From Saccostrea cucullata (lineage: Eukaryota), in contig NW_026928448.1 of assembly GCF_032062105.1 (NCBI RefSeq), positions 124,001 to 188,000 on the forward strand: 64,000 nt of DNA, read 5' to 3'. Below, piece after piece: positions 10,478 through 58,200 of this stretch. The notes beneath the pieces were generated by a model. The model had not been told where the DNA came from. It worked only from the letters and a program-made list of their open reading frames with translations, and did no database searches. A program made the position numbers and the translations under genes. Each line of letters begins with the position of its first letter. The first letter of the stretch is position 1.

Positions 10478-13400
10478 TTTAAACATATTTTATTGAGTAT
10501 AATTCAATCAGGATTGGGCAACAGGCAGTGCCTATGTATACCCTCTCCTTGTATAATTGGTCAAGATACAAATTAGTAGGAAATAATACATGAACATGAT
10601 AATCAATAAAATTATAATGAAAAATAAAGATTCACAATCAAGTATTATTTATCAGTATTATATCTAAAAAAAAAAATGACAACCCCCTAACTGTATGCAT
10701 ATTATTTACATACTGTTCCAGCTTAAAAATAATACAAATATTTGAAAAAAAATATGCATTTAATAGAATATTTAATATAACAGTGTCCCTAATTTAGTCT
10801 TTTAGAAGATTTAATAAATTCCTGTACATATGAAAATATTTTACAATTTGTTTGATAAGAGTATTGAGATTTTCCTCTTAGTAGAGCGTCGAGTTCAAAA
10901 ACAACATCAATATCATTTAATTTCTTTACCAATATGTTTCTTTCAACATTATACGATGGGCAGTTGATAAAATAATGTTCAGTATCTTCAGTATGAAATC
11001 CACACTTTTGACATGATTGAATATCTGATAAAAAATGATTTTTTAAATGTGCATTAAGATTACTAGCATTGTTTCGCAACTGACAATGCAAGATATTTTC
11101 TTTTCTATTACCAAAGTTAAAGTACCTACAAGGTTTATTAGTTGCTCCCCAATTCTTAAGTTTTGCTTTAAAGATAGCTAATGATGGAGAGTTTTTTACA
11201 TCTTCACTAAGACTGTTCCAAAGTTTTACGGTTGAGGGAATAAAACTATTATAGTATGACATTGTTTTACAAACTGGTATACATAAGTTATTACATCCAG
11301 ACCTTAGGTTGTAAGCATGTTGAACAGGAAAACAAGGTTGAATCAAATTATACAAATAATCAGGTGCAGAACCATTAATCATTTTATACATCAATTGAAG
11401 TTTGTGTTTTTCTCTTCTAAGATATAATGGTTCCCATCCTAGTTCACCATACAAACAAGTTCTGGATGAATTAACTCTAAGCCCAGTAATAATTCTGGCA
11501 GCTTCTATCTGAACTTTTTCGAGCAATTCTGAACTACTTTGGGTACAATTATCCCATACAACATCAGCATATTCTAACATTGGTCTTATAAAGGCAAAAT
11601 AAATTTTTATTAGTGAATTTCTATCAATACTATGTTTCAGTAACCTAATTATATTTAATCTTTTACATGCCTTTTCATATATATATTCAATGTGTGATTG
11701 TTCCAAGAACCATCTGCTTGAAATTGTAATCCTAAATGAACATGAGTATTTGATTGTTTTATATAATCACCTCCATATCCAAACTGAATATTAGGATAAC
11801 TTATTTGTTTTCTAGTAAAATCAACATTAACAGTTTTTTCACTATTAAAATCTACAGCCCAAGCTTTGGACCAATTTCTTATCTTTTCAAGATCTTGAGT
11901 AAGGGACATTGTTGGAGCATTGATATCATTGTCTATAATAGCAAACAAAGAAGTATCATCAGCAAACAGTCGATTATTACAAGATATATCTTTAGCTATA
12001 TCATTTATATATAACAAAAACAAGAAGGGACCCAGTACAGACCCCTGGGGTACCCCAGCATCTATTGTTTTACATGATGATGAAAAGCCTTCTAAATTCA
12101 CTCTTTGTTGTCTTTCAGTAAGATAGTCTTCAATCCAACCCAGTATATTACTTCTAAATCCAAAGTTTTTAAGTTTGAAAATCATTCCCTTATGCCATAC
12201 CCTGTCAAAAGCTTTGGAAATGTCACAAAATATAAAGCGTATATCTCTGCCTCTGTCAAGGTTTGACATAATTTTATCATATATTTCAACTAATTGGTTA
12301 ACAGTAGAATCCCCAGGTTGGAACCCAGATTGGTATTTACACAATAAGTCATGTTCCTTAATATGATTAAACATATATTTAAAAAGTATTTTTTCCATTA
12401 GTTTACATATAGAACAAGTCAATGATATTGGTCTGTAATTATTAGGTTGTTGGGGACAGCCTTTATTTTTAAAAATAGGTGAAATATGTGCTTGTTTCCA
12501 TATGTATGGAAGAACTTTATTTGTAAGTGAAAGGTTAAATAATCTACATAGAGGTTTATATATGGAATAACGGGTTTCCTTTAATATTCTGGGAGAAATT
12601 CCATCTGGTCCACATGGTTTAGAGGGATCAAGTATGCTTAACTGATCAAGAACATCTTGATCATTTATTTCAAAATCACAGAAGTAGTCTGGAGGTCCAG
12701 CTCCATGTTCGGGCAAATCTGGCTCATTTTCAATATGTGATATATTAGAGAAAAAATTATTAAATTCTTCAGCTTTATCAATTGGATGAATCAATATTCT
12801 ACCATCTTGTGATTTGATAGAGGATGGGGGAGAACTTTGTTTCTTTAACCTTGCAACGGATTTTGCTATACGCCACCACTTTCCTGGTGGAATAGATTTG
12901 TCAATGAGTTGAGAGACAAGTTTAATTTTGTACTCCTTCCTACTTTTCCGTACTAAGTCTATTACTTCGTTACGGACTTGTCTGAATTTTTGCCAGTGTA
13001 ATGGATTTTTAGTATGCTTTGCCTTTTTATGAATTCTTTTTCTTTGCCTCATTTTCCTACGAATTTCTGTGGTAATATATGGTTTATCTGATGGACGTAT
13101 TGTAATTTGCTTTTTTGGTATATGTTTATCTACTAAGGTTAGGTAAGTGCATGTAAAATTTTCATAGACTTCATTCATATTATTAGAGGTAAACACTTTT
13201 TCATCCCAATTAACATTTTGTAAGTCATTGTTTAGGTCTTGATAATTTGCATTATTATAATTTCTAATTGTGCGTTTGAAGGCATGTTGCTTATATGTTT
13301 GAAATGAGATTTCTGTAGAGACAGGTGAATGAGAACTACAAATGGGTTCATCGACTACAACACTCTTAACTTTGGATGGATCATTAGTTAACACTAGGTC

Positions 13401-14750
13401 TATGCAAGTTCCAATATCAGTTGTAAAATTGGTAGGCTCTAAGACAACATTACTTAAATTAAGTTGTAGTAGTAGGTTTTGAAATGTATTATTCCCAGGA
13501 GCTAACATGTTTACATTGAAATCGCCTAACAAAAACAATTTCATCTCTGTATCTAGAGCTCTCTCTACAGTACTTGTAAACCTATCCCAAAAATCAGACC
13601 CAGAGTTGGGAGGTCTGTAGATGACTCCAACCAAAAACTTTTGATTTTGTGACTGGATCTCTGCCCATAAAATTTCAATATCAGAAAAATTTAAATCATT
13701 TCTAACTTTAAAATTTAATCTAGTTGAAATGTACAGTGCAACTCCTCCACCATATCTATTTCTGTCTTTTCTAACTGGTTGATAATAACCATCAAGTGAA
13801 AGATTACTATTGTCAATACTCTGATCTAAGTGAGTTTCAGTAATGGCAATTATATCATTTCCTGAAAATTCATTTCTAATAATATCAAGTTTAGGGGGTA
13901 AACTGCATACATTGTTGTGCACAATACTTATGTGTTTTTTTTATAATCTGCTGGACCTGGGTTTGTTTCCACACATCCACATATTAGTAATATTGTAATC
14001 ATAGTGATATTAAAGTGATTATTTGAGATATTAAAGATTTTTATGAAATAGTAAACAGGATACTGTTCACATTTTTGGTATTTGTTACTAATCAATGAAA
14101 AAACATTTGAACTGACATCTCTAGCTACATGTAACTGGAGGATAATAATGAAATGAAATATAGTATGCAAGTAATAAGCTGGAACAAAACTAAATGGAGA
14201 AAAATAAAACAAAACTAAATGGAATTCAAACAAGAGTAAACAAAAAATGAACAAAAAATATATGCAAATGAAAAACAAACTTTGTAGAACAAAAAGTGTT
14301 AACATATGTACACACACTGCATTTATTGGAGTCTGAAACAGTTGTAGTAGGAATACTGTAGGAATATTGTTTAAGCACTGTAAATTTCACAGGTTTTAAA
14401 CCCAAGCAAACAATTTCCAAAAAAGTCAAATTGCTGAATGTATCCATAGAACAAATTCGAGCAACAATTACTAGCCCATGACTCCAGTATTAAACATACA
14501 CACAAAAGGATTAAGATGATTCTTAAGCATATAAGTATTGAGAGACTTCGAATTACCATATCTATATATGTTGAATTCCGAAAATTCATAAAAATCCTTA
14601 CAAATAAAGATACAAAGAAAGTTCCAGTAAATGTTCTACCAAGCTTCTTTCTGTACTCTTCACTAAAATTTAAACAGTGGTGAAGGAGAAACTTCAGTTT
14701 CAGGAGCAAAAGTATATTCGAGAGGTGTTGTAAATCAGAATTGGATACTT
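10478..14750 (-). mobile_element. CR1/L2-clade non-LTR retrotransposon, near full length
   Basis: APE endonuclease plus RT ORF (next feature). 3' UTR ends GGAGAGGG..AGGCACTGCCT..GCCCAATCC..AATAAAAATATGTTTAAA at ~10478-10550. Hydrophobic upstream ORF fragments span 13928-14709. The 5' boundary is approximate. Confidence 0.9.
10789..13990 (-). CDS. LINE ORF2 (APE endonuclease + reverse transcriptase + C-terminal Cys/His domain), split by two frameshifts (~13930 and ~11695)
   Basis: ITETHL, GGGVALY, YRPP, GDFN, CIDL and SSH (endonuclease); YRPISLT, QSGF, DISKAFDRVWH, GVPQGSVLGP and LFADD (RT); CQKC..EDTEHYFINC at the C-terminus. ORFs 11655-13922 and 10789-11706 join across a 2-bp insertion. Confidence 0.9.
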
Positions 14751-18020: not shown

Positions 18021-21000
18021 TTAATGAAATACAAGAGTGAGAGGTCCATTAATGGTGTTGTCAAAGGTATCGTGCTCAGTACGACAACATATGTCTATTC
18101 TGCTGTATCCCTTTCCATAAAAAGCGGGCCCTGTATCCACAACCTAAAGAAAAAGTCAGTTACTTTTTACAATGCTAAAAATATAATAATTAAATGTAAA
18201 ATGAAAAAAATAAACTCTTTATATAGTTTTGAATATTACTTCTCGGAAAAATGTAAGAACATTTTTTATTTCGTTTATTCCGTAAATGAAAGAAGTTTAA
18301 AGCATACATGTCTACACATGTACAATGTAATTTGGTCATACACTTTGTTCATTGAATCAATCTATGAAGTCTAAGTTTAGATTACCCGAATGGCTGGCCT
18401 TTGTCTTCAAAGAGACTTTAATTTAGAAGGCAACATGCCTGTTCGTTTTACCAATTTTTCATTGTTATAGAAACAATCGTGCAAAATAACACATTTGAAT
18501 CGGAGAAGGAGTTCGAATTTAATATGCTTTCGGGACAAAATTTTAGAAAACAGCTAAGTCAATCAATGATCAATGATTGTAATTGGAAACAAATACAAAT
18601 TAAGTGAGTAGTATTCTAAAGTAGAGTATTCATATATAATGTCGTTTAATTTGCATTCTGGGCTTTATTGTACATACAATGAAATCGATGAATCTGTTGT
18701 ACTTCCTATTCAATTCGGGGATGCAAACATGAGTTCCATAGGGAATCCCTGCGTGGTTATCCATAGCAACACTTACGTGATGAACTCGTCCCTCAAGATA
18801 ATCCTTCATACATAAGGAAAGAAGAAACTTGAAATATCTTGTAGCATATTGACTATGAATTTTGTGAAAAGAACAGAATATTAAGGATGACGTTTACTCA
18901 GGTTTCAGAAAAGAGAAAGAAAATTTTATAAAGTATAATATGTTAAATCAAAAATTGCAATAAATGAAAATATAACTAAGTTTTAACTCAATATCAATTT
19001 AAAAATTTAATATTTTATTATTTGAAGAAAATATACGGGATGAAATGTCAATGTATGGTAATGCAGAGGAAATTCGGACTAAATTTTTCATTTTTCATTT
19101 TTGTCAAAATCTTTTTATTTTTGCAATATTAATCATTATGTAAATGTTACACGTATTTTTAAATATCATTTTGCAGATATTATATGTATTTAAGGTAGGT
19201 CACTCGTCAGCCTTTTGGAAAAGTTCACGCAGAACTTCTTACTTCAAAACTATTTATAAAAATTCAATTTTTATAACATGTTTAATTTCAACAATGTTAA
19301 TGCTTTAGCATTCAACAAAAAAACTAAAAACGGCTCAAAAAGCTACAAAGAAGCAAGATTTGTGAGGGACTATTTTTTGTGGTGGAAGGATATTTAGCAG
19401 ATAATTCTGCAAATTTGCACATTTATTAAATTTAATATCTTGGACTTTTAGCCTCATATACTTTTACTCGGAGAATATTTTCCATTATGTTATTGCTAGG
19501 AATATTTAATATAGGTCTTAATTTATATTTTAGAACAAGTTTTACACCTTCCTTCAACAAACTTTACCAAAAAATGAAGATATGTCAAATTAGTCACTAT
19601 AAAATTAACACCATTTTTTGCCTGAAAATCACATATTTTGACCAATATTTTAAAATTAACATCACTGACCCCAACTTTTTCTTTCATTATTTTAAAGTAC
19701 TCGATACTTGTGACTAATCAGCACTTAAGTCGTAATAAGCTTGATTTAAAAAAATGTTTTATTGTCTATTTAATTTTTTAATACCCCAAAATATGTTACT
19801 TTTTAGTGCAAAAAGGTCACACAATAATTTACGCGCATTAACTTGCAAGTCTAGATTTATTCAATGATAAATATTATTCAAAATATTTTACGTAAAATAA
19901 GATATTTTTTTGCCATGGTTACATCTGATAAAATATAATAAAGGTTTAAGTAATCAACCTAAGAGTTAAAATTTAAATGCAAAAAGGTCAACTTCATTGC
20001 ACCGTAGATCAGTAAGATGAACACTGACCCCCTATTTTCTCTGCGATTTTGAGTCACTCTATATGAGTACTTATCCAAAATATACTTCTCAATAAATCCT
20101 TGATTTAAGAAATTTCACGAGTGATACCGGTATACCTTAAGCTCATAAATTATTTCAAATAATTGAATGATATGAAATAAAGAAATTCAATAAAATGAAC
20201 ATAAACCATTCCGGACAACATATCTCAATAATTTGATCATTGACCCCATTTATAATGTTAATACCATGAGAATTTGGGCAAAAAGGAAACCTAAGGCTAT
20301 AAATAATTTAGAGTTCTTATCAGTGAGATTTTTGTAATATTCGATTAAAAATGGGGAAAAATATAAATACGGCAGAGGAAATTCGGACTGTAATAATTAT
20401 CAAGTTTATGGCCAAAACTTCAATCGTTTCTTTATATGAAGCAATGCTGTTCCATTCCTATAACATTTTATTATTTGAAGAGTTTTGTTGCTTATAATAT
20501 TTTGTAAGTGAAGAAAAAAATGGTCATAGTGTAAAAATTGAGGTATTTCCCGCGAAATACTTAGGGGCCACTAGCATGAAAAGTAGGTCATTGACCTAGT
20601 AGTTTGAAATTGAAATTTAACATCAGAATTATAGATGTACAATGTGCAATAGGTGGTTTTTCATTCATATCAGTGGAATTTTTAGTCATCTGAGTAAAGG
20701 TATACCTTAAGCAAATTATTTATGTGTATCTTCTTCCTTTATTCTTATAGAACTGTTAAATACCTGTAGTGTTTGTAACTTGTGATCACGCATATCCACA
20801 AATCCCCCTTCAATGGGATCGTCCGCTGGGTAGTATCCCGTCCCCCGGGCATGGTGACGGTGATGGCCGTGGGTGCATTCTATGTTATTTATTGCCCCTG
20901 AAAGATAAAAGATTATCTTTCCTGTTTCAAATGGAGCTTTGTTTCTATTAATATTGTAGACAAAGCCAAATTTAGGCTATAAAATACATGTAGTTCTCAT

Positions 21001-21483
21001 TATAAAATCAAAATGTTGATACACGCCATTGGTCCTAGAATTAGAAAAATATTAAACAATACAAAAATTATTATAATGAATCTATAAAATAAAATATCTC
21101 TGAACATGTTTTAGACAGAACAAATATGTGTATTTAACTTGTGAGAAGGAATCCGGACTTTTGGGGGGAAATTGTTTGAAAAAATAATTTAGTGATAGAC
21201 TTTTATAATTAAATATAGATTCATATAAATACATTTCAAAATCATCTTTATAAGAATAAATACATTAAATTTTGAAATTAATGACATTTACAAACATACT
21301 TCTTTTCTTGAAATCCTTATAATAAACAATATGACAAATATTAATATTTGTGCTATTGAAAGATACACTTAAAAAAGAACAAAGTAAAGGCCTAGAAAAT
21401 AGAAATTGTAACTTTACAAGAATATCCATTGTACCTGAAGACAAACCGACTAGAAACACGAGAACAGTCACAAGACGGTACAT
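18021..21483 (-). CDS. Secreted 3D-domain (MltA-like lytic transglycosylase, double-psi beta-barrel) protein, 143 aa, 4 exons
   Basis: Exons 21483-21435, 20897-20764, 18803-18678 and 18143-18021, all GT-AG with consistent phases (1,0,0). Protein: MYRLVTVLVFLVGLSSGAINNIECTHGHHRHHARGTGYYPADDPIEGGFVDMRDHKLQTLQDYLEGRVHHVSVAMDNHAGIPYGTHVCIPELNRKYNRFIDFIVVDTGPAFYGKGYSRIDICCRTEHDTFDNTINGPLTLVFH*. It has a signal peptide and the 3D-domain motifs TGY, VAMD, IPYGT, DTG.A..G..RIDI. Confidence 0.85.
19194..20136. mobile_element. Non-autonomous DNA transposon with TTAA target site (Kolobok-like) in intron 2 of the 3D gene
   Basis: TTAA|GGTAGGTCACTCGT ... ACGAGTGATACCGGTATACC|TTAA. Internal direct repeats CACTGACCCC..TTTT at ~19662 and ~20022. 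Confidence 0.65.
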
Positions 21484-23802: not shown

Positions 23803-25032
23803 CTATGTTTCAATCGTAACATAGAAAATGAAAACGATGATAGGAAGCATGGTGGAACAAATAAAAATGAATAAGAACAACTTGTCCAAAGCATATGCAA
23901 CTTCCTTCCAGGTGACCTTCTGATCTACGATGTCTTCACACGATCTGCCACGGTCTTCAGCGGGTTTAATTTTGATGTCGACAACAGATAAAAACTTTTT
24001 TTCGTGTGACTTTTGTCCCATAAATCTTACAAAGGCAACAGTGCAAGCAGAGAGGACATCACATGACCTGTGGTATATATTTATTACGAGGACATTGCAG
24101 ATTAAGATCATGGTGCTGTTTGCAAGTTGAAACGCAAAAATGATACTGAGGACAGAAAGCGGATTTGACGTCTGAGGAACCTTTTCAGTGAGGATAGTGA
24201 TGAAGACGGCAAATGACAGGAAACTAGTGATAGAAAAAGAAATTCTCTCCCCTGATTCGACCGGAAGTAGAAAGACCACCATATTTATTGACAAAAGAAA
24301 AAGAACCGGCAAAAATAGATTGACAATGAGGAAGGAAGATTTTCTTTTCATCTCCAGTTTAATTTCCATCGCTTTGTCAGTCATCATAGTGTCTAGAATT
24401 GATATCGCCCACTGTCCATTCTCAGTAAATGTATGCATTGTCGCTGTGGGTTTAGCGAGTTGCAGTTTAACTTCATAACCTTCATACTTGAGAACAGACA
24501 AGGTCAGCGAACAGTGATGGACATCAAAAGGATAATACGTCACATCCGGTTCACACATGATTTTTATCAGCCCATTAATCTGTAAATTAATAAATCCGTG
24601 ATTTGTAGCCGGTACTGTAAATCCTGCTACCTCAATCTCCATGAATGCTTCACTTTCTGCCGGATTTCGCACACCGATGTTTGGGATCCAAATTTCATCA
24701 ATCGGCAGTCTGGCGGCCGTTGCATTACCATAATCGCTTGGATTCCAAAAGATAGACTCGTCTTTCCAGGATAACTTAAGTCCACCATTGAAGGCAAAAA
24801 GACCACTGACTTCATTGTATTCTTGAATAGTGTGAAACTTGAAGGAAATTTTTACAATCAGTGGCTGATCTTGGTTTAATACTGGCCTTAAAGTTTTTTT
24901 GTATCCATTTAACAATTTGTCTTGTAGTGTTTTTTGTTGTTGGAGAGTCGAGAACTTTGGAGTTTTTGCTCCGAATACAATACATTGTGAAAAATATATA
25001 AATCCCAAAACTATACACCAGGTCCGATACAT
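23803..25032 (-). CDS. Intronless Cys-loop ligand-gated ion channel, nAChR-like non-alpha subunit (copy 1), 409 aa
   Basis: Signal peptide, YKKTLRPV, WIPNI, Cys-loop CEPDVTYYPFDVHHC, ENGQW, four TM helices, and ESGERISF before TM2. No vicinal CC in loop C. Confidence 0.95.
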   Translation of the reverse strand: MYRTWCIVLGFIYFSQCIVFGAKTPKFSTLQQQKTLQDKLLNGYKKTLRPVLNQDQPLIVKISFKFHTIQEYNEVSGLFAFNGGLKLSWKDESIFWNPSDYGNATAARLPIDEIWIPNIGVRNPAESEAFMEIEVAGFTVPATNHGFINLQINGLIKIMCEPDVTYYPFDVHHCSLTLSVLKYEGYEVKLQLAKPTATMHTFTENGQWAISILDTMMTDKAMEIKLEMKRKSSFLIVNLFLPVLFLLSINMVVFLLPVESGERISFSITSFLSFAVFITILTEKVPQTSNPLSVLSIIFAFQLANSTMILICNVLVINIYHRSCDVLSACTVAFVRFMGQKSHEKKFLSVVDIKIKPAEDRGRSCEDIVDQKVTWKEVAYALDKLFLFIFICSTMLPIIVFIFYVTIET

Positions 25033-55200: not shown

Positions 55201-58200
55201 TTGACTCAAAAGTTATTTGTCAGAAATTATCTGTTATTCAAATGTGTTCTTGATATGTGTGATTGTAAACAAATGTTTTATACCTTGAAAGAATAGGACT
55301 ATAGCAACAGACAATGAATAACTACGTGAAGAGAATTCTGCGATTCTCAGAAATATTCTGCTAAAATCATAGACCTTTCCTTCAAAGCAGATCATGTTGG
55401 GTTTGCAAAGACGTTTTTTTATGAAAGCTTAAATATTCATTAAAACTTATCAAAAACTTTCATATAATGAAATGTAAGTTTAAATCAAAATTTGTGTTAT
55501 TAAAGTAACAATGGTGTTTACACCCACAAAAGAGCAAAATGATCAAAATCTACTCACTTATTTCTTCATAATCAGACACACACTCTGTATTCTGTAAATA
55601 CATTAAATAAAATAAGAAGTTAACACAGATAGAGAAAATATGATTCTCTTAAACATAGACCTAAAGCGCTTTAGGACTGTGTCTAAAACGTACATGTTTC
55701 TTGTTTTTCTGCTTTTTAATTTTACCAACCTGAATTTGCTCTGAAAGAGAACAATGACCTGCAAGTAGAGCAATCTCACTTGGAGTTCTGTCATCTTTGT
55801 TTTTTATCAACCTAGCGGCCTTATAACCAGGATATTTCATCAACGTCTCGCAGAACCGATGTAAACCGTATTTGGCACCAAAATGGAGGATAGTGGGAAG
55901 TTCGGAATCTGATGCATCGGCTGATATAACAACAATGAAATTTTAAAATTTAAAATCATTCGTTTTTAAAATTGCAAATGCCTTCTAATTTTACATTTTT
56001 GAAAATTTAAACTTTTTTTCATTATTTCATGTTCTTAATTGCTTTTTCACTTCCTATACATTTTTTGCATATATGTATACCCACCAAATATTTTCGAATT
56101 TTCCTCTTGATTCAAGTTTTCTAGACCGGTAAGTGGAATAGTATGAGTTTTGAAGTTGGAGAATTTCTCACTTAAAATCAGATCTAAAGCTTCGGGGTTT
56201 TCAGTTTTCATTGCTTTACAGATAAAATCGATGGGGTTTATGACGTCATCTAAGAGATCTGAGAGTAGCTGCATTTTAGGCCGAATTGTAAATGACGTTT
56301 TTCCCAAAGATGAGTCGTCAACCAGAACCTCCACTAAAACTTCTCCCTCCGGCATTCCTTAAATTAGAGTAAGAAAATTTTCTTGATCCTACATATGTAG
56401 TGTAATATAACAGTTTAGCATTCATCTATGAATTTTCGATAGATCCAGGGCGTATATTGTTTTTGTCCTGTCTGTCTGTCTGTTTGTTTGTTTGTCCGTT
56501 TGTTTGTTTGTCTCGAACTTTAACCTTCACCATAACTGTTAAAATGCCCTTATTAAGTCTTTTGTTTATAGTGCCACATTATATATGATATACTTTTGTC
56601 ATATTTAGTTTGCATATTTCACTAATCAGGTTCTTTCAAATGATACCAAGGTCAATGACCTTGACTGTGACCTATATGCTAAAAATAGCTTTTCTGAACC
56701 CTCACTATAACTTTTGAACCATGAGAGATTGAGATTTCATATTTAGTACGCATACACCAATCAATCAAGCTCTTTCGAATGACACCAAGGTCAATGACCT
56801 TGTGACCTTGACTGTGACCTTAATGCTAAAAATAGCTTTTCCGAACTTTGTTGCCGCCGGGCGCATAGTGTTTCACAAACACTTCTTGTTTCTACAGTAC
56901 TTTTAAAATAGTCTTTTGTTTATAGTGCCACATTATATATAATATAGTGTCGTTCAAAAGGATTATTTTAAATACTGAAAATACGCTTTTTCTAGAGGCT
57001 TCATTATTCTGCTAGATAAAAATTTAATGCTACTTAAAATCAAAGGTATAAATAATAGATTGCTAATTTAAAATAATTATGGATGTTATAACGCTGTGAC
57101 AAATATCTGCAAAAATATTGTGACTGTTTACATGACGTTTAATTTAATCTTACGCGGAAAAGATGCATTTACAGTATGGCATAGTTTATTGATAATATTA
57201 AGGAAATATCAAATTAAAATCTTGACATCCCAAAAAATGATGTTATAATCGTAAAAAGTGTACCCTTATAATTTAATTTTTCTTTAAGATCTAATGATGA
57301 GGGTGCAAAAATAAATGGGAGAAGGTTACTTTACAGTAACTGTACAGTTTTAAATAATCTGAAAGAGTTACTAGAGTGCCATATTACCTTCTGGGTTGAA
57401 TTTGTAAGCGGTTTCATTTAGTTTTAAACATTGCACTGTATTAGAAAGACCACATTGGTGTCTCAGACGGACGCTCATATTCTTGCCGTTCATTGTTTTC
57501 TTAAAGGTGATAATGACATCGTCTTTGGCCTGTAAGATTTTTTAAAAAAAATTAAAAATCAATATATTTATCAAGCACTGTATTTTTTACATGTCAAATA
57601 ATCTAAGGCTTAAATATTGATACCGTCCGGGAAATAAAAACATAGAGTTGCTGGTGATGATAAATAAAAATTTCTTCAGACAAATCAAAAATACAATGTA
57701 AAAGTAATACTCTCCTACCGTCCAAATCTCTTTCGGTGTCAGTTTGAAATTAACCAGAGTAGGAACTTGAAATGCTTTGAAATTCGTATCTATCAAAGCA
57801 AAAATCTGAAAACATGTCATTTTGAACTCCTCGTCGTTTTTCCCTGTACTAAGGCATTTCCAGCTAAGACTGTCCGGGCACTGATACTCCAAGACTCGTC
57901 TTGTGTTGCTATTTTTAACATCGATGACGTCATGATGTATTAAAGCTTGATTAACAGATCCTGATGCTATTTTCTTCAGAAAATGCTTAGGGCGAATTTC
58001 AAGTTCTTCTAACATTTCAGGTGTTAAAACAAGAATAAACACCTTGCTTTCTTCGGGGGGTCGTCTAATGCAGATATTGTGCTTACGAACTGTATATTTA
58101 AATTTATCCAAAGATGCGAGGATAAAATCACATATACTTTCGCCGTCATCGGCAAAGTAGAGAACAATACTATTATCATCTGAAAAAAGAGAATAAAAAG

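What the first reader, a model, noticed from the sequence alone, without database searches (positions are those of the whole stretch)
18021..21483. Hidden 4-exon animal gene encoding a secreted bacterial-type 3D/MltA-like peptidoglycan lytic transglycosylase
Seen: four short exons (49, 134, 126 and 123 nt) splice through GT-AG sites in consistent phase into an uninterrupted 143-aa protein with a signal peptide. The ORF track shows only exon 1. Known: the motif order ARGTGYY ... VAMD ... IPYGTHVCIP ... VVDTGPAFYGKGYSRIDI matches the bacterial 3D domain (Pfam PF06725; TAY..IAVDP..IPLGT..DTGGAIKGNRIDI). All three name-giving aspartates are present, and the last corresponds to the catalytic Asp of MltA-type enzymes. 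Animals lack peptidoglycan and this is not a c-, g- or i-type lysozyme. Inference: a domesticated, probably horizontally acquired, secreted antibacterial or digestive cell-wall enzyme in an immune gene cluster. The introns and intronic transposon exclude bacterial contamination.
Basis: partly seen in the sequence, partly recalled or inferred. Interest (0 to 1): 0.93.

Follow-up and report, generated by a model that had tools for sequence, protein, structure and literature searches.

The report
Ancient bacterial wall-cutting enzyme in oysters
Oysters, other molluscs and at least some arthropods carry a small, unstudied secreted protein with the fold and active site of a bacterial enzyme that cuts the bacterial cell wall, so it is probably a very old borrowed antibacterial enzyme unlike the known animal lysozymes.

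Summary
The four-exon gene is real. Exons of 49/134/126/123 nt splice in phase to 143 aa, and RNA reads show all three junctions. It is not hidden: it equals RefSeq XP_062615906.1 (Saccostrea cucullata, 'uncharacterized'), and UniRef already calls some mollusc orthologues '3D domain-containing'. The Pacific-oyster orthologue's model (pLDDT 90) best matches the lytic transglycosylases YuiC (Z 10.1) and MltA (Z 9.3). All five YuiC catalytic-site residues are kept in the oyster and nearly all relatives; the Pfam 3D score is below cut-off. Bivalves, gastropods, a chiton and a millipede share the same intron positions, so the gene predates the mollusc-arthropod split. Bacterial relatives are up to 67% identical, mostly Myxococcota and Bdellovibrionota, and many carry peptidoglycan-binding domains; abalone copies carry a bacterial SH3. 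Best reading: a secreted MltA-type lytic transglycosylase against bacterial walls, acquired once from bacteria in deep time. Activity is untested. The tree makes animals one clade (94/91) but does not show nesting within bacteria (AU p=0.86). The 'immune gene cluster' claim is unsupported. I found no paper on the family, and the scan's index held no earlier finding of it.

The parts
21435..21483 (-). Exon 1 coding part: start codon and signal-peptide-like segment (residues 1-16), phase-1 donor
   Evidence: hydropathy peak 2.9; junction reads; a phase-1 intron after the signal peptide also occurs in limpet, chiton and millipede
20764..20897 (-). Exon 2 (residues 17-61), with T36 (20841-20839) and Y38 (20835-20833), the inferred equivalents of YuiC T91/Y93
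   Evidence: PMC4499186
18678..18803 (-). Exon 3 (residues 62-103), with D76 (18761-18759), the first 3D aspartate; 126 nt in every animal checked
18021..18143 (-). Exon 4 coding part (residues 104-143 and stop), with D106 (18137-18135) and the inferred catalytic D120 (18095-18093)
20898..21434 (-). Intron 1, 537 nt, GT-AG, phase 1
18804..20763 (-). Intron 2, 1960 nt, GT-AG, phase 0; position shared with limpet, chiton and millipede; 216 nt in S. echinata
18144..18677 (-). Intron 3, 534 nt, GT-AG, phase 0; position shared with limpet, chiton and millipede
18885..20706 (.). Older non-coding element in intron 2: degenerate terminal inverted repeats, TTAA on both sides, GG...CC ends (Kolobok-like by my recollection of such termini, not tested)
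   Evidence: pair I2; one other partial copy at 80-81%
19194..20136 (.). Younger ~940-nt TTAA-flanked element nested in the first, with at least 39 other copies at 88-93% identity
   Evidence: loose read ends at 20124

Best explanation
The gene encodes a secreted, stand-alone 3D/MltA-type lytic transglycosylase. Shown: the spliced, expressed gene; the double-psi beta-barrel model of the orthologue; conservation of T36, Y38, D76, D106 and D120. Inferred by analogy with YuiC and MltA: the glycan binds in the barrel groove, D106 holds the N-acetyl group at subsite -2, and T36 orients D120. D120 protonates the glycosidic oxygen and then activates O6, so the strand is cut without water to give 1,6-anhydro ends. 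Because the animal has no peptidoglycan, the likely substrate is the wall of ingested or invading bacteria (digestion and defence). The gene most likely entered animals once from bacteria before the mollusc-arthropod split, gained a eukaryotic signal peptide, cysteines and introns, and was then inherited vertically.
For: Fold: YuiC Z 10.1, rmsd 2.5 over 96 residues; MltA Z 9.3; expansin/kiwellin 6.8 or less; GH45 about 4-5. hhalign puts VAMD, DTG and RIDI on the matching motifs of a canonical 3D protein (E 1.3e-4). The three Asp are in 91/91 bacterial and metagenomic domains; D76 and D106 are in 36/36 animal domains and D120 in 34/36, the two exceptions being first repeats of tandem two-domain proteins. 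26 of the 120 top hits carry PG_binding_1 and 6 non-animal hits carry SH3_3. Abalone copies carry SH3_3 at E 1e-11. All 9 listed exonic read differences are synonymous. Animals form one branch at 94/91. Introns are shared with a millipede. Bacterial relatives reach 67% identity and come from 11 named phyla.
Against: No activity data exist for any member. The Pfam 3D score is below the 23.8-bit cut-off for all animal proteins scanned. The oyster protein has Pro at the YuiC S154 position, whose backbone NH binds product (Pro occurs there in 8/36 animal and 2/91 bacterial domains). YuiC also cuts chitin oligomers, so the fold does not fix the substrate. The AU test does not reject bacteria as a clade sister to animals (p 0.86). 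My word-based searches missed the arthropod clusters that the Atlas shows, so absence from other eukaryotes is poorly tested.
Confidence: 0.68

Rival explanations
1. The same active site acts mainly on the animal's own or dietary chitin or chito-oligomers (shell, gut lining, cuticle) rather than on bacterial walls.
For: YuiC converted penta-NAG to an anhydro product and MltA binds chitohexaose. The family is kept in chitin-rich phyla and appears expanded in arthropods (25-29 of the 30 nearest Atlas clusters carry no common Pfam family; the top three are 100% eukaryotic and mostly Arthropoda).
Against: No chitin-binding domain turned up in the Pfam scans of animal members. The fusions seen are SH3b-type or small cysteine-rich domains. 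Bacterial sister proteins carry PG_binding_1.
Confidence: 0.15
2. It is a non-lytic peptidoglycan-binding or weakly processing protein (a sensor, opsonin or symbiont manager) rather than a killing enzyme.
For: Low read depth in the two raw-read runs. Some animal repeats have lost the catalytic Asp. In Mytilus edulis the gene lies head-to-head with a PGRP-domain gene. Aphid RlpA is a precedent for host DPBB proteins in symbiosis (PMC9116674).
Against: All five catalytic-site residues are intact in every single-domain animal copy, which binding alone would not need.
Confidence: 0.12
3. The gene is not a bacteria-to-animal transfer: it is either an old eukaryotic gene lost widely, or the close bacterial subfamily took it from animals.
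For: The tree does not resolve nesting. The close bacterial subfamily is rare: 80 loci from 185,579 genomes with one pattern. Eukaryote sampling was incomplete.
Against: The bacterial copies are intronless and spread over 11 named phyla. The wider 3D family and the more distant relatives are bacterial or phage. No credible non-animal eukaryote appeared among the listed hits; the one algal label is a 1.6-kb contig that groups with bacteria.
Confidence: 0.15

Closest known systems
Bacillus subtilis YuiC / SpsC group (3D domain, Pfam PF06725; PDB 4WJT; PMC4499186)
   Same: Signal peptide plus a stand-alone 3D catalytic domain; best structural match (Z 10.1); same order T-x-Y, D, DTG, D.
   Different: 23% identity; 14 residues between the second and third Asp against 11 in YuiC; a different insert; extra cysteines; Pfam score below cut-off; animal host that has no peptidoglycan.
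MltA lytic transglycosylases (E. coli, Neisseria, Burkholderia LtgG)
   Same: Double-psi barrel catalytic domain (Z 7-9.3); catalytic Asp equivalent (E. coli D308).
   Different: Lacks MltA's large inserted domain and lipoprotein anchor; 143 aa against 330-400 aa.
Uncharacterised bacterial subfamily (Myxococcota, Bdellovibrionota, Vulcanimicrobiota, Melainabacteria and others)
   Same: 43-67% identity over the domain, with the same family motifs; the true sister sequences.
   Different: Intronless; many fused to PG_binding_1, SH3_3 or CHAP, or with lipoprotein-like leaders; some are leaderless 116-120 aa proteins. I found none characterised.
Aphid RlpA1-5 (DPBB_1, PF03330; PMC9116674) and bivalve phage-type lysozyme (PMC5303276)
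   Same: Animal genes of bacterial or phage origin for peptidoglycan-active proteins that gained introns or fusions.
   Different: Different families; confined to aphids or to two bivalve subclasses, whereas this gene spans Mollusca and Arthropoda with shared introns.
Database labels: RefSeq XP_062615906.1 'uncharacterized'; UniRef K1PL29 '3D domain-containing protein'
   Same: The same protein and its orthologue; the domain name is already assigned automatically.
   Different: I found no function, origin or family-level description in ten literature searches.

Membership tests
3D domain (PF06725) / MltA-type lytic transglycosylase | Pfam gathering score of at least 23.8 bits | tested here: not met
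   Single exons gave no hit. The M. gigas orthologue scored 15.5 bits, E 0.021. 34 of 66 family members hit 3D, and one bacterial member passes at 26.5 bits.
3D domain (PF06725) / MltA-type lytic transglycosylase | Double-psi beta-barrel fold like YuiC and MltA domain A | tested here: met
   Model of the orthologue (86% identical over the core), pLDDT 90: YuiC Z 10.1, MltA Z 9.3; Foldseek probability 1.0.
3D domain (PF06725) / MltA-type lytic transglycosylase | Three conserved aspartates in order (YuiC D129/D151/D162) | tested here: met
   D76/D106/D120, aligned to a canonical 3D protein by hhalign and conserved. Equivalence rests on motifs and aligned ranges, not an atom-level superposition.
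3D domain (PF06725) / MltA-type lytic transglycosylase | Thr that orients the catalytic Asp, and the neighbouring Tyr (YuiC T91/Y93) | tested here: met
   T36/Y38 are present in 34/36 animal domains; T or S plus Y in 91/91 others.
3D domain (PF06725) / MltA-type lytic transglycosylase | Cleaves glycan to 1,6-anhydro products | not testable with these tools
   Needs a recombinant assay.
Animal lysozymes (c-, g-, i-, phage-type) and PGRP amidases | Lysozyme-like or Amidase_2 fold and profile | tested here: not met
   No such Pfam or structure hit.
RlpA / expansin / GH45 DPBB proteins | Closest structural and profile match to these branches | tested here: not met
   They score Z 6.9 or less, below YuiC and MltA; no DPBB_1 hit.
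Horizontally acquired animal gene | Integrated in the animal genome, with introns, and expressed | tested here: met
Horizontally acquired animal gene | Animal clade nested within bacterial diversity | tested here: inconclusive
   Nested in the best careful tree (enclosing branch 88/86), but AU p 0.86 for the sister arrangement.
Horizontally acquired animal gene | Absent from other eukaryotes | tested here: inconclusive
   Only molluscs and arthropods were named, but the searches were word-limited and missed known arthropod clusters.

The most novel reading that the evidence does not exclude
Protostome animals have kept, since before the mollusc-arthropod split, their own lytic transglycosylase borrowed from bacteria, possibly predatory ones. 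Besides weakening bacterial walls it would release 1,6-anhydro-muropeptides, the tracheal-cytotoxin-type fragments that PGRP receptors detect (my own knowledge, not tested), so the host would make its own alarm signal from bacterial walls.
Probability: 0.2. Interest if true: 0.88.

Novelty: new variant of a known kind. Interest (0 to 1): 0.66.

Why it matters
The animal wall-cutting enzymes I know of are hydrolases (lysozymes) or amidases; the aphid RlpA proteins are the only lytic-transglycosylase-type precedent I found. A conserved MltA-type enzyme across Mollusca and Arthropoda would be a further class of animal antibacterial or digestive enzyme, one that could escape bacterial lysozyme inhibitors and yield immune-active anhydro-muropeptides (both inferred). 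It would also be a very old domesticated bacterial gene. The protein is small, secreted and single-copy in this oyster, so the claim is cheap to test.

Tried and rejected
Pfam scans of single exons gave nothing. A sequence-profile search of the PDB gave no significant hit. No relative was found in viral contigs; PHROGs and NCBIfam gave only weak hits for bacterial members. Ten literature searches found no paper on this family. Rejected: bacterial contamination (spliced reads, conserved introns); a chance ORF or pseudogene (synonymous-only differences, intact orthologues); recent oyster-specific transfer (shared introns); immune gene cluster (neighbours differ by genus); prophage or secretion-system context for the bacterial relatives (none obvious in nine loci read by ORF lists only). 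The 127-row careful tree did not finish, so the quick tree was used. The organisms behind the Logan records P0009 and P0067 could not be identified. My first exon boundaries were wrong and were corrected.

Full report
Observation. The gene lies on the minus strand. Exons 21483-21435, 20897-20764, 18803-18678 and 18143-18021 (49, 134, 126, 123 nt) join through GT-AG introns of 537, 1960 and 534 nt in phases 1, 0, 0 to a 143-aa frame with no internal stop. The N-terminus is hydrophobic, as expected of a signal peptide (simple hydropathy only; no dedicated predictor was available). RNA-seq runs labelled as the same species show all three junctions at these positions: two raw-read runs give 5, 17 and 12 junction reads in total, and one contig of a third run spans exons 2-3. 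The reads differ from the window at several exonic sites, so they come from a divergent population or sister lineage; the nine exonic differences listed are all synonymous (more differences were not shown). The gene is single-copy in this assembly.

The gene is not hidden. Its four exon pieces match RefSeq XP_062615906.1 of Saccostrea cucullata, 'uncharacterized protein LOC134277601', at every residue compared. UniRef names the orthologues in Magallana, Mytilus, Patella, Lottia and Littorina '3D domain-containing protein'.

How the searches were done. Fold prediction and homology searches used the Magallana gigas orthologue P0057 (38/44, 38/42 and 31/40 identical per exon) and other database proteins. 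Exons were joined only inside local scripts, to check the frame and codon positions. One slip: the database record P0246, which turned out to equal the joined model, went by its id into one Pfam scan, which amounts to the joined search I was told to leave out. It gave only a weak 3D hit (E 0.13) and no conclusion rests on it. P0246 was also a row in local trees and alignments. The window has no N, and no contig looked human.

Fold and active site. The AlphaFold model of the orthologue has mean pLDDT 90. Against 48,161 PDB representatives the best matches are B. subtilis YuiC (Z 10.1, rmsd 2.5, 96 residues), a diffocin baseplate protein (9.7) and MltA enzymes (9.3 to 7.1). Expansins, kiwellin and GH45 score lower, and Foldseek agrees. 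In YuiC, D162 is catalytic and is oriented by T91; D151 binds the -2 sugar; D129 is the third aspartate; and a 1,6-anhydro product was seen in the crystal (PMC4499186). The oyster protein has T36, Y38, D76, D106 and D120 in that order, and hhalign puts its VAMD, DTG and RIDI motifs on those of a canonical 3D protein. The three aspartates are invariant in 91 bacterial and metagenomic domains. In animals D120 is lost only in the first repeat of two tandem-domain proteins. Formal Pfam membership fails, at 15.5 bits against a cut-off of 23.8, so this is a divergent subfamily that should work like a 3D enzyme but is not a threshold member of PF06725.

Distribution and age. Named animal members come from bivalves, gastropods, a chiton and the millipede Chamberlinius. 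The ESM Atlas returns arthropod-dominated clusters as nearest by features (0.94-0.96) and by shape (TM 0.88-0.90); I could not fetch their sequences. Exact splicing of five genes shows the same two phase-0 introns (after TLQ and before VVDTG), the same 126-nt exon between them and a phase-1 intron after the signal peptide in oyster, limpet, chiton and millipede. The simplest reading is one intron-bearing gene in the mollusc-arthropod ancestor. Animal copies share cysteines that are rare in the bacterial ones.

Bacterial relatives. A scan of species genomes gave 80 loci: 39 Myxococcota, 12 Pseudomonadota, 9 Bdellovibrionota, 6 Vulcanimicrobiota and others, at 43-67% identity over the domain. 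Many carry PG_binding_1, SH3_3 or CHAP domains, which points to peptidoglycan as the ancestral substrate. The share of phyla rich in predatory bacteria suggests a prey-lysis role, but this is a lead only. Abalone copies carry a bacterial-type SH3 domain, and others carry a small cysteine-rich N-terminal domain.

Tree. Animals form one branch at 94/91 in the careful 61-row tree, lying among the bacterial subfamily when rooted on distant relatives. A tree with the bacteria held together as sister to animals is not rejected (AU p 0.86) and scored higher than the quick free tree. A single origin in animals is therefore reasonably supported, while donor and direction are not shown. Bacteria-to-animal transfer is inferred from the bacterial and phage breadth of the 3D family and from the substrate.

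Context. The nearest genes are two intronless Cys-loop receptor ORFs 2.3 and 5.7 kb upstream; DBB-domain exons lie 20 and 35 kb away. The receptor neighbour is kept in S. echinata. Crassostrea virginica has a polyketide-synthase neighbour, Ostrea edulis has none within 10 kb, and Mytilus edulis has a PGRP-domain gene head-to-head. 'Immune cluster' is not supported. Intron 2 is long because of two nested TTAA-flanked elements; it is 216 nt in S. echinata.

Mechanism and verdict. Most likely this is a secreted lytic transglycosylase that cuts the walls of ingested or invading bacteria to anhydro-muropeptides (0.68). The rivals are a chitin-directed role (0.15) and a non-lytic binding or signalling role (0.12). 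Separately, there is about a 0.15 chance that the origin is not a bacteria-to-animal transfer. Ten literature searches found no description of the family, though the library omits most subscription journals. The chemistry and the idea of borrowed wall-cutting enzymes in animals are known (PMC9116674, PMC5303276), and databases already attach the domain name. What appears new is an MltA-type family conserved across two phyla with shared introns. Novelty: new variant of a known kind. Interest 0.66.

Noticed in passing
window 23803-25032 and 27200-28429 (-): Two near-identical intronless 409-aa Cys-loop (nicotinic-receptor-like) ORFs in tandem upstream of the gene; one such neighbour is conserved in S. 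echinata.
   Followed up: partly
window 41479-41820 (+) and 56047-56355 (-): DBB-domain exons of two oppositely oriented BCAP/BANK-like genes.
   Followed up: partly
window about 34650-34760, 35065-35180 and 36305-36410: Three similar ~105-nt elements with matching ends and a variable middle, already noted by the scan (s1-711502) as possible structured RNAs; I only read the sequence.
   Followed up: no
window 10789-13922 (-): LINE-type element with endonuclease and reverse-transcriptase domains, split over two overlapping frames.
   Followed up: partly
L096:1-1785 (Mytilus edulis): A gene with DUF4559 and Amidase_2 (PGRP) domains lies head-to-head with the orthologue, about 3.2 kb away.
   Followed up: partly
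L093:8799-21037 (Chamberlinius hualienensis): Three clustered copies with the same exon structure, plus a fourth copy on another scaffold; the millipede proteins have a short extra cysteine-containing C-terminal tail.
   Followed up: partly
P0009 and P0156: Animal proteins with two tandem domains in which the first has lost the catalytic Asp (Val or Asn), possibly a binding module next to an active one.
   Followed up: partly
L022, L033, L038; P0061, P0069, P0074: Leaderless 116-120 aa stand-alone bacterial members with no obvious operon context; how they would reach peptidoglycan is unexplained.
   Followed up: no
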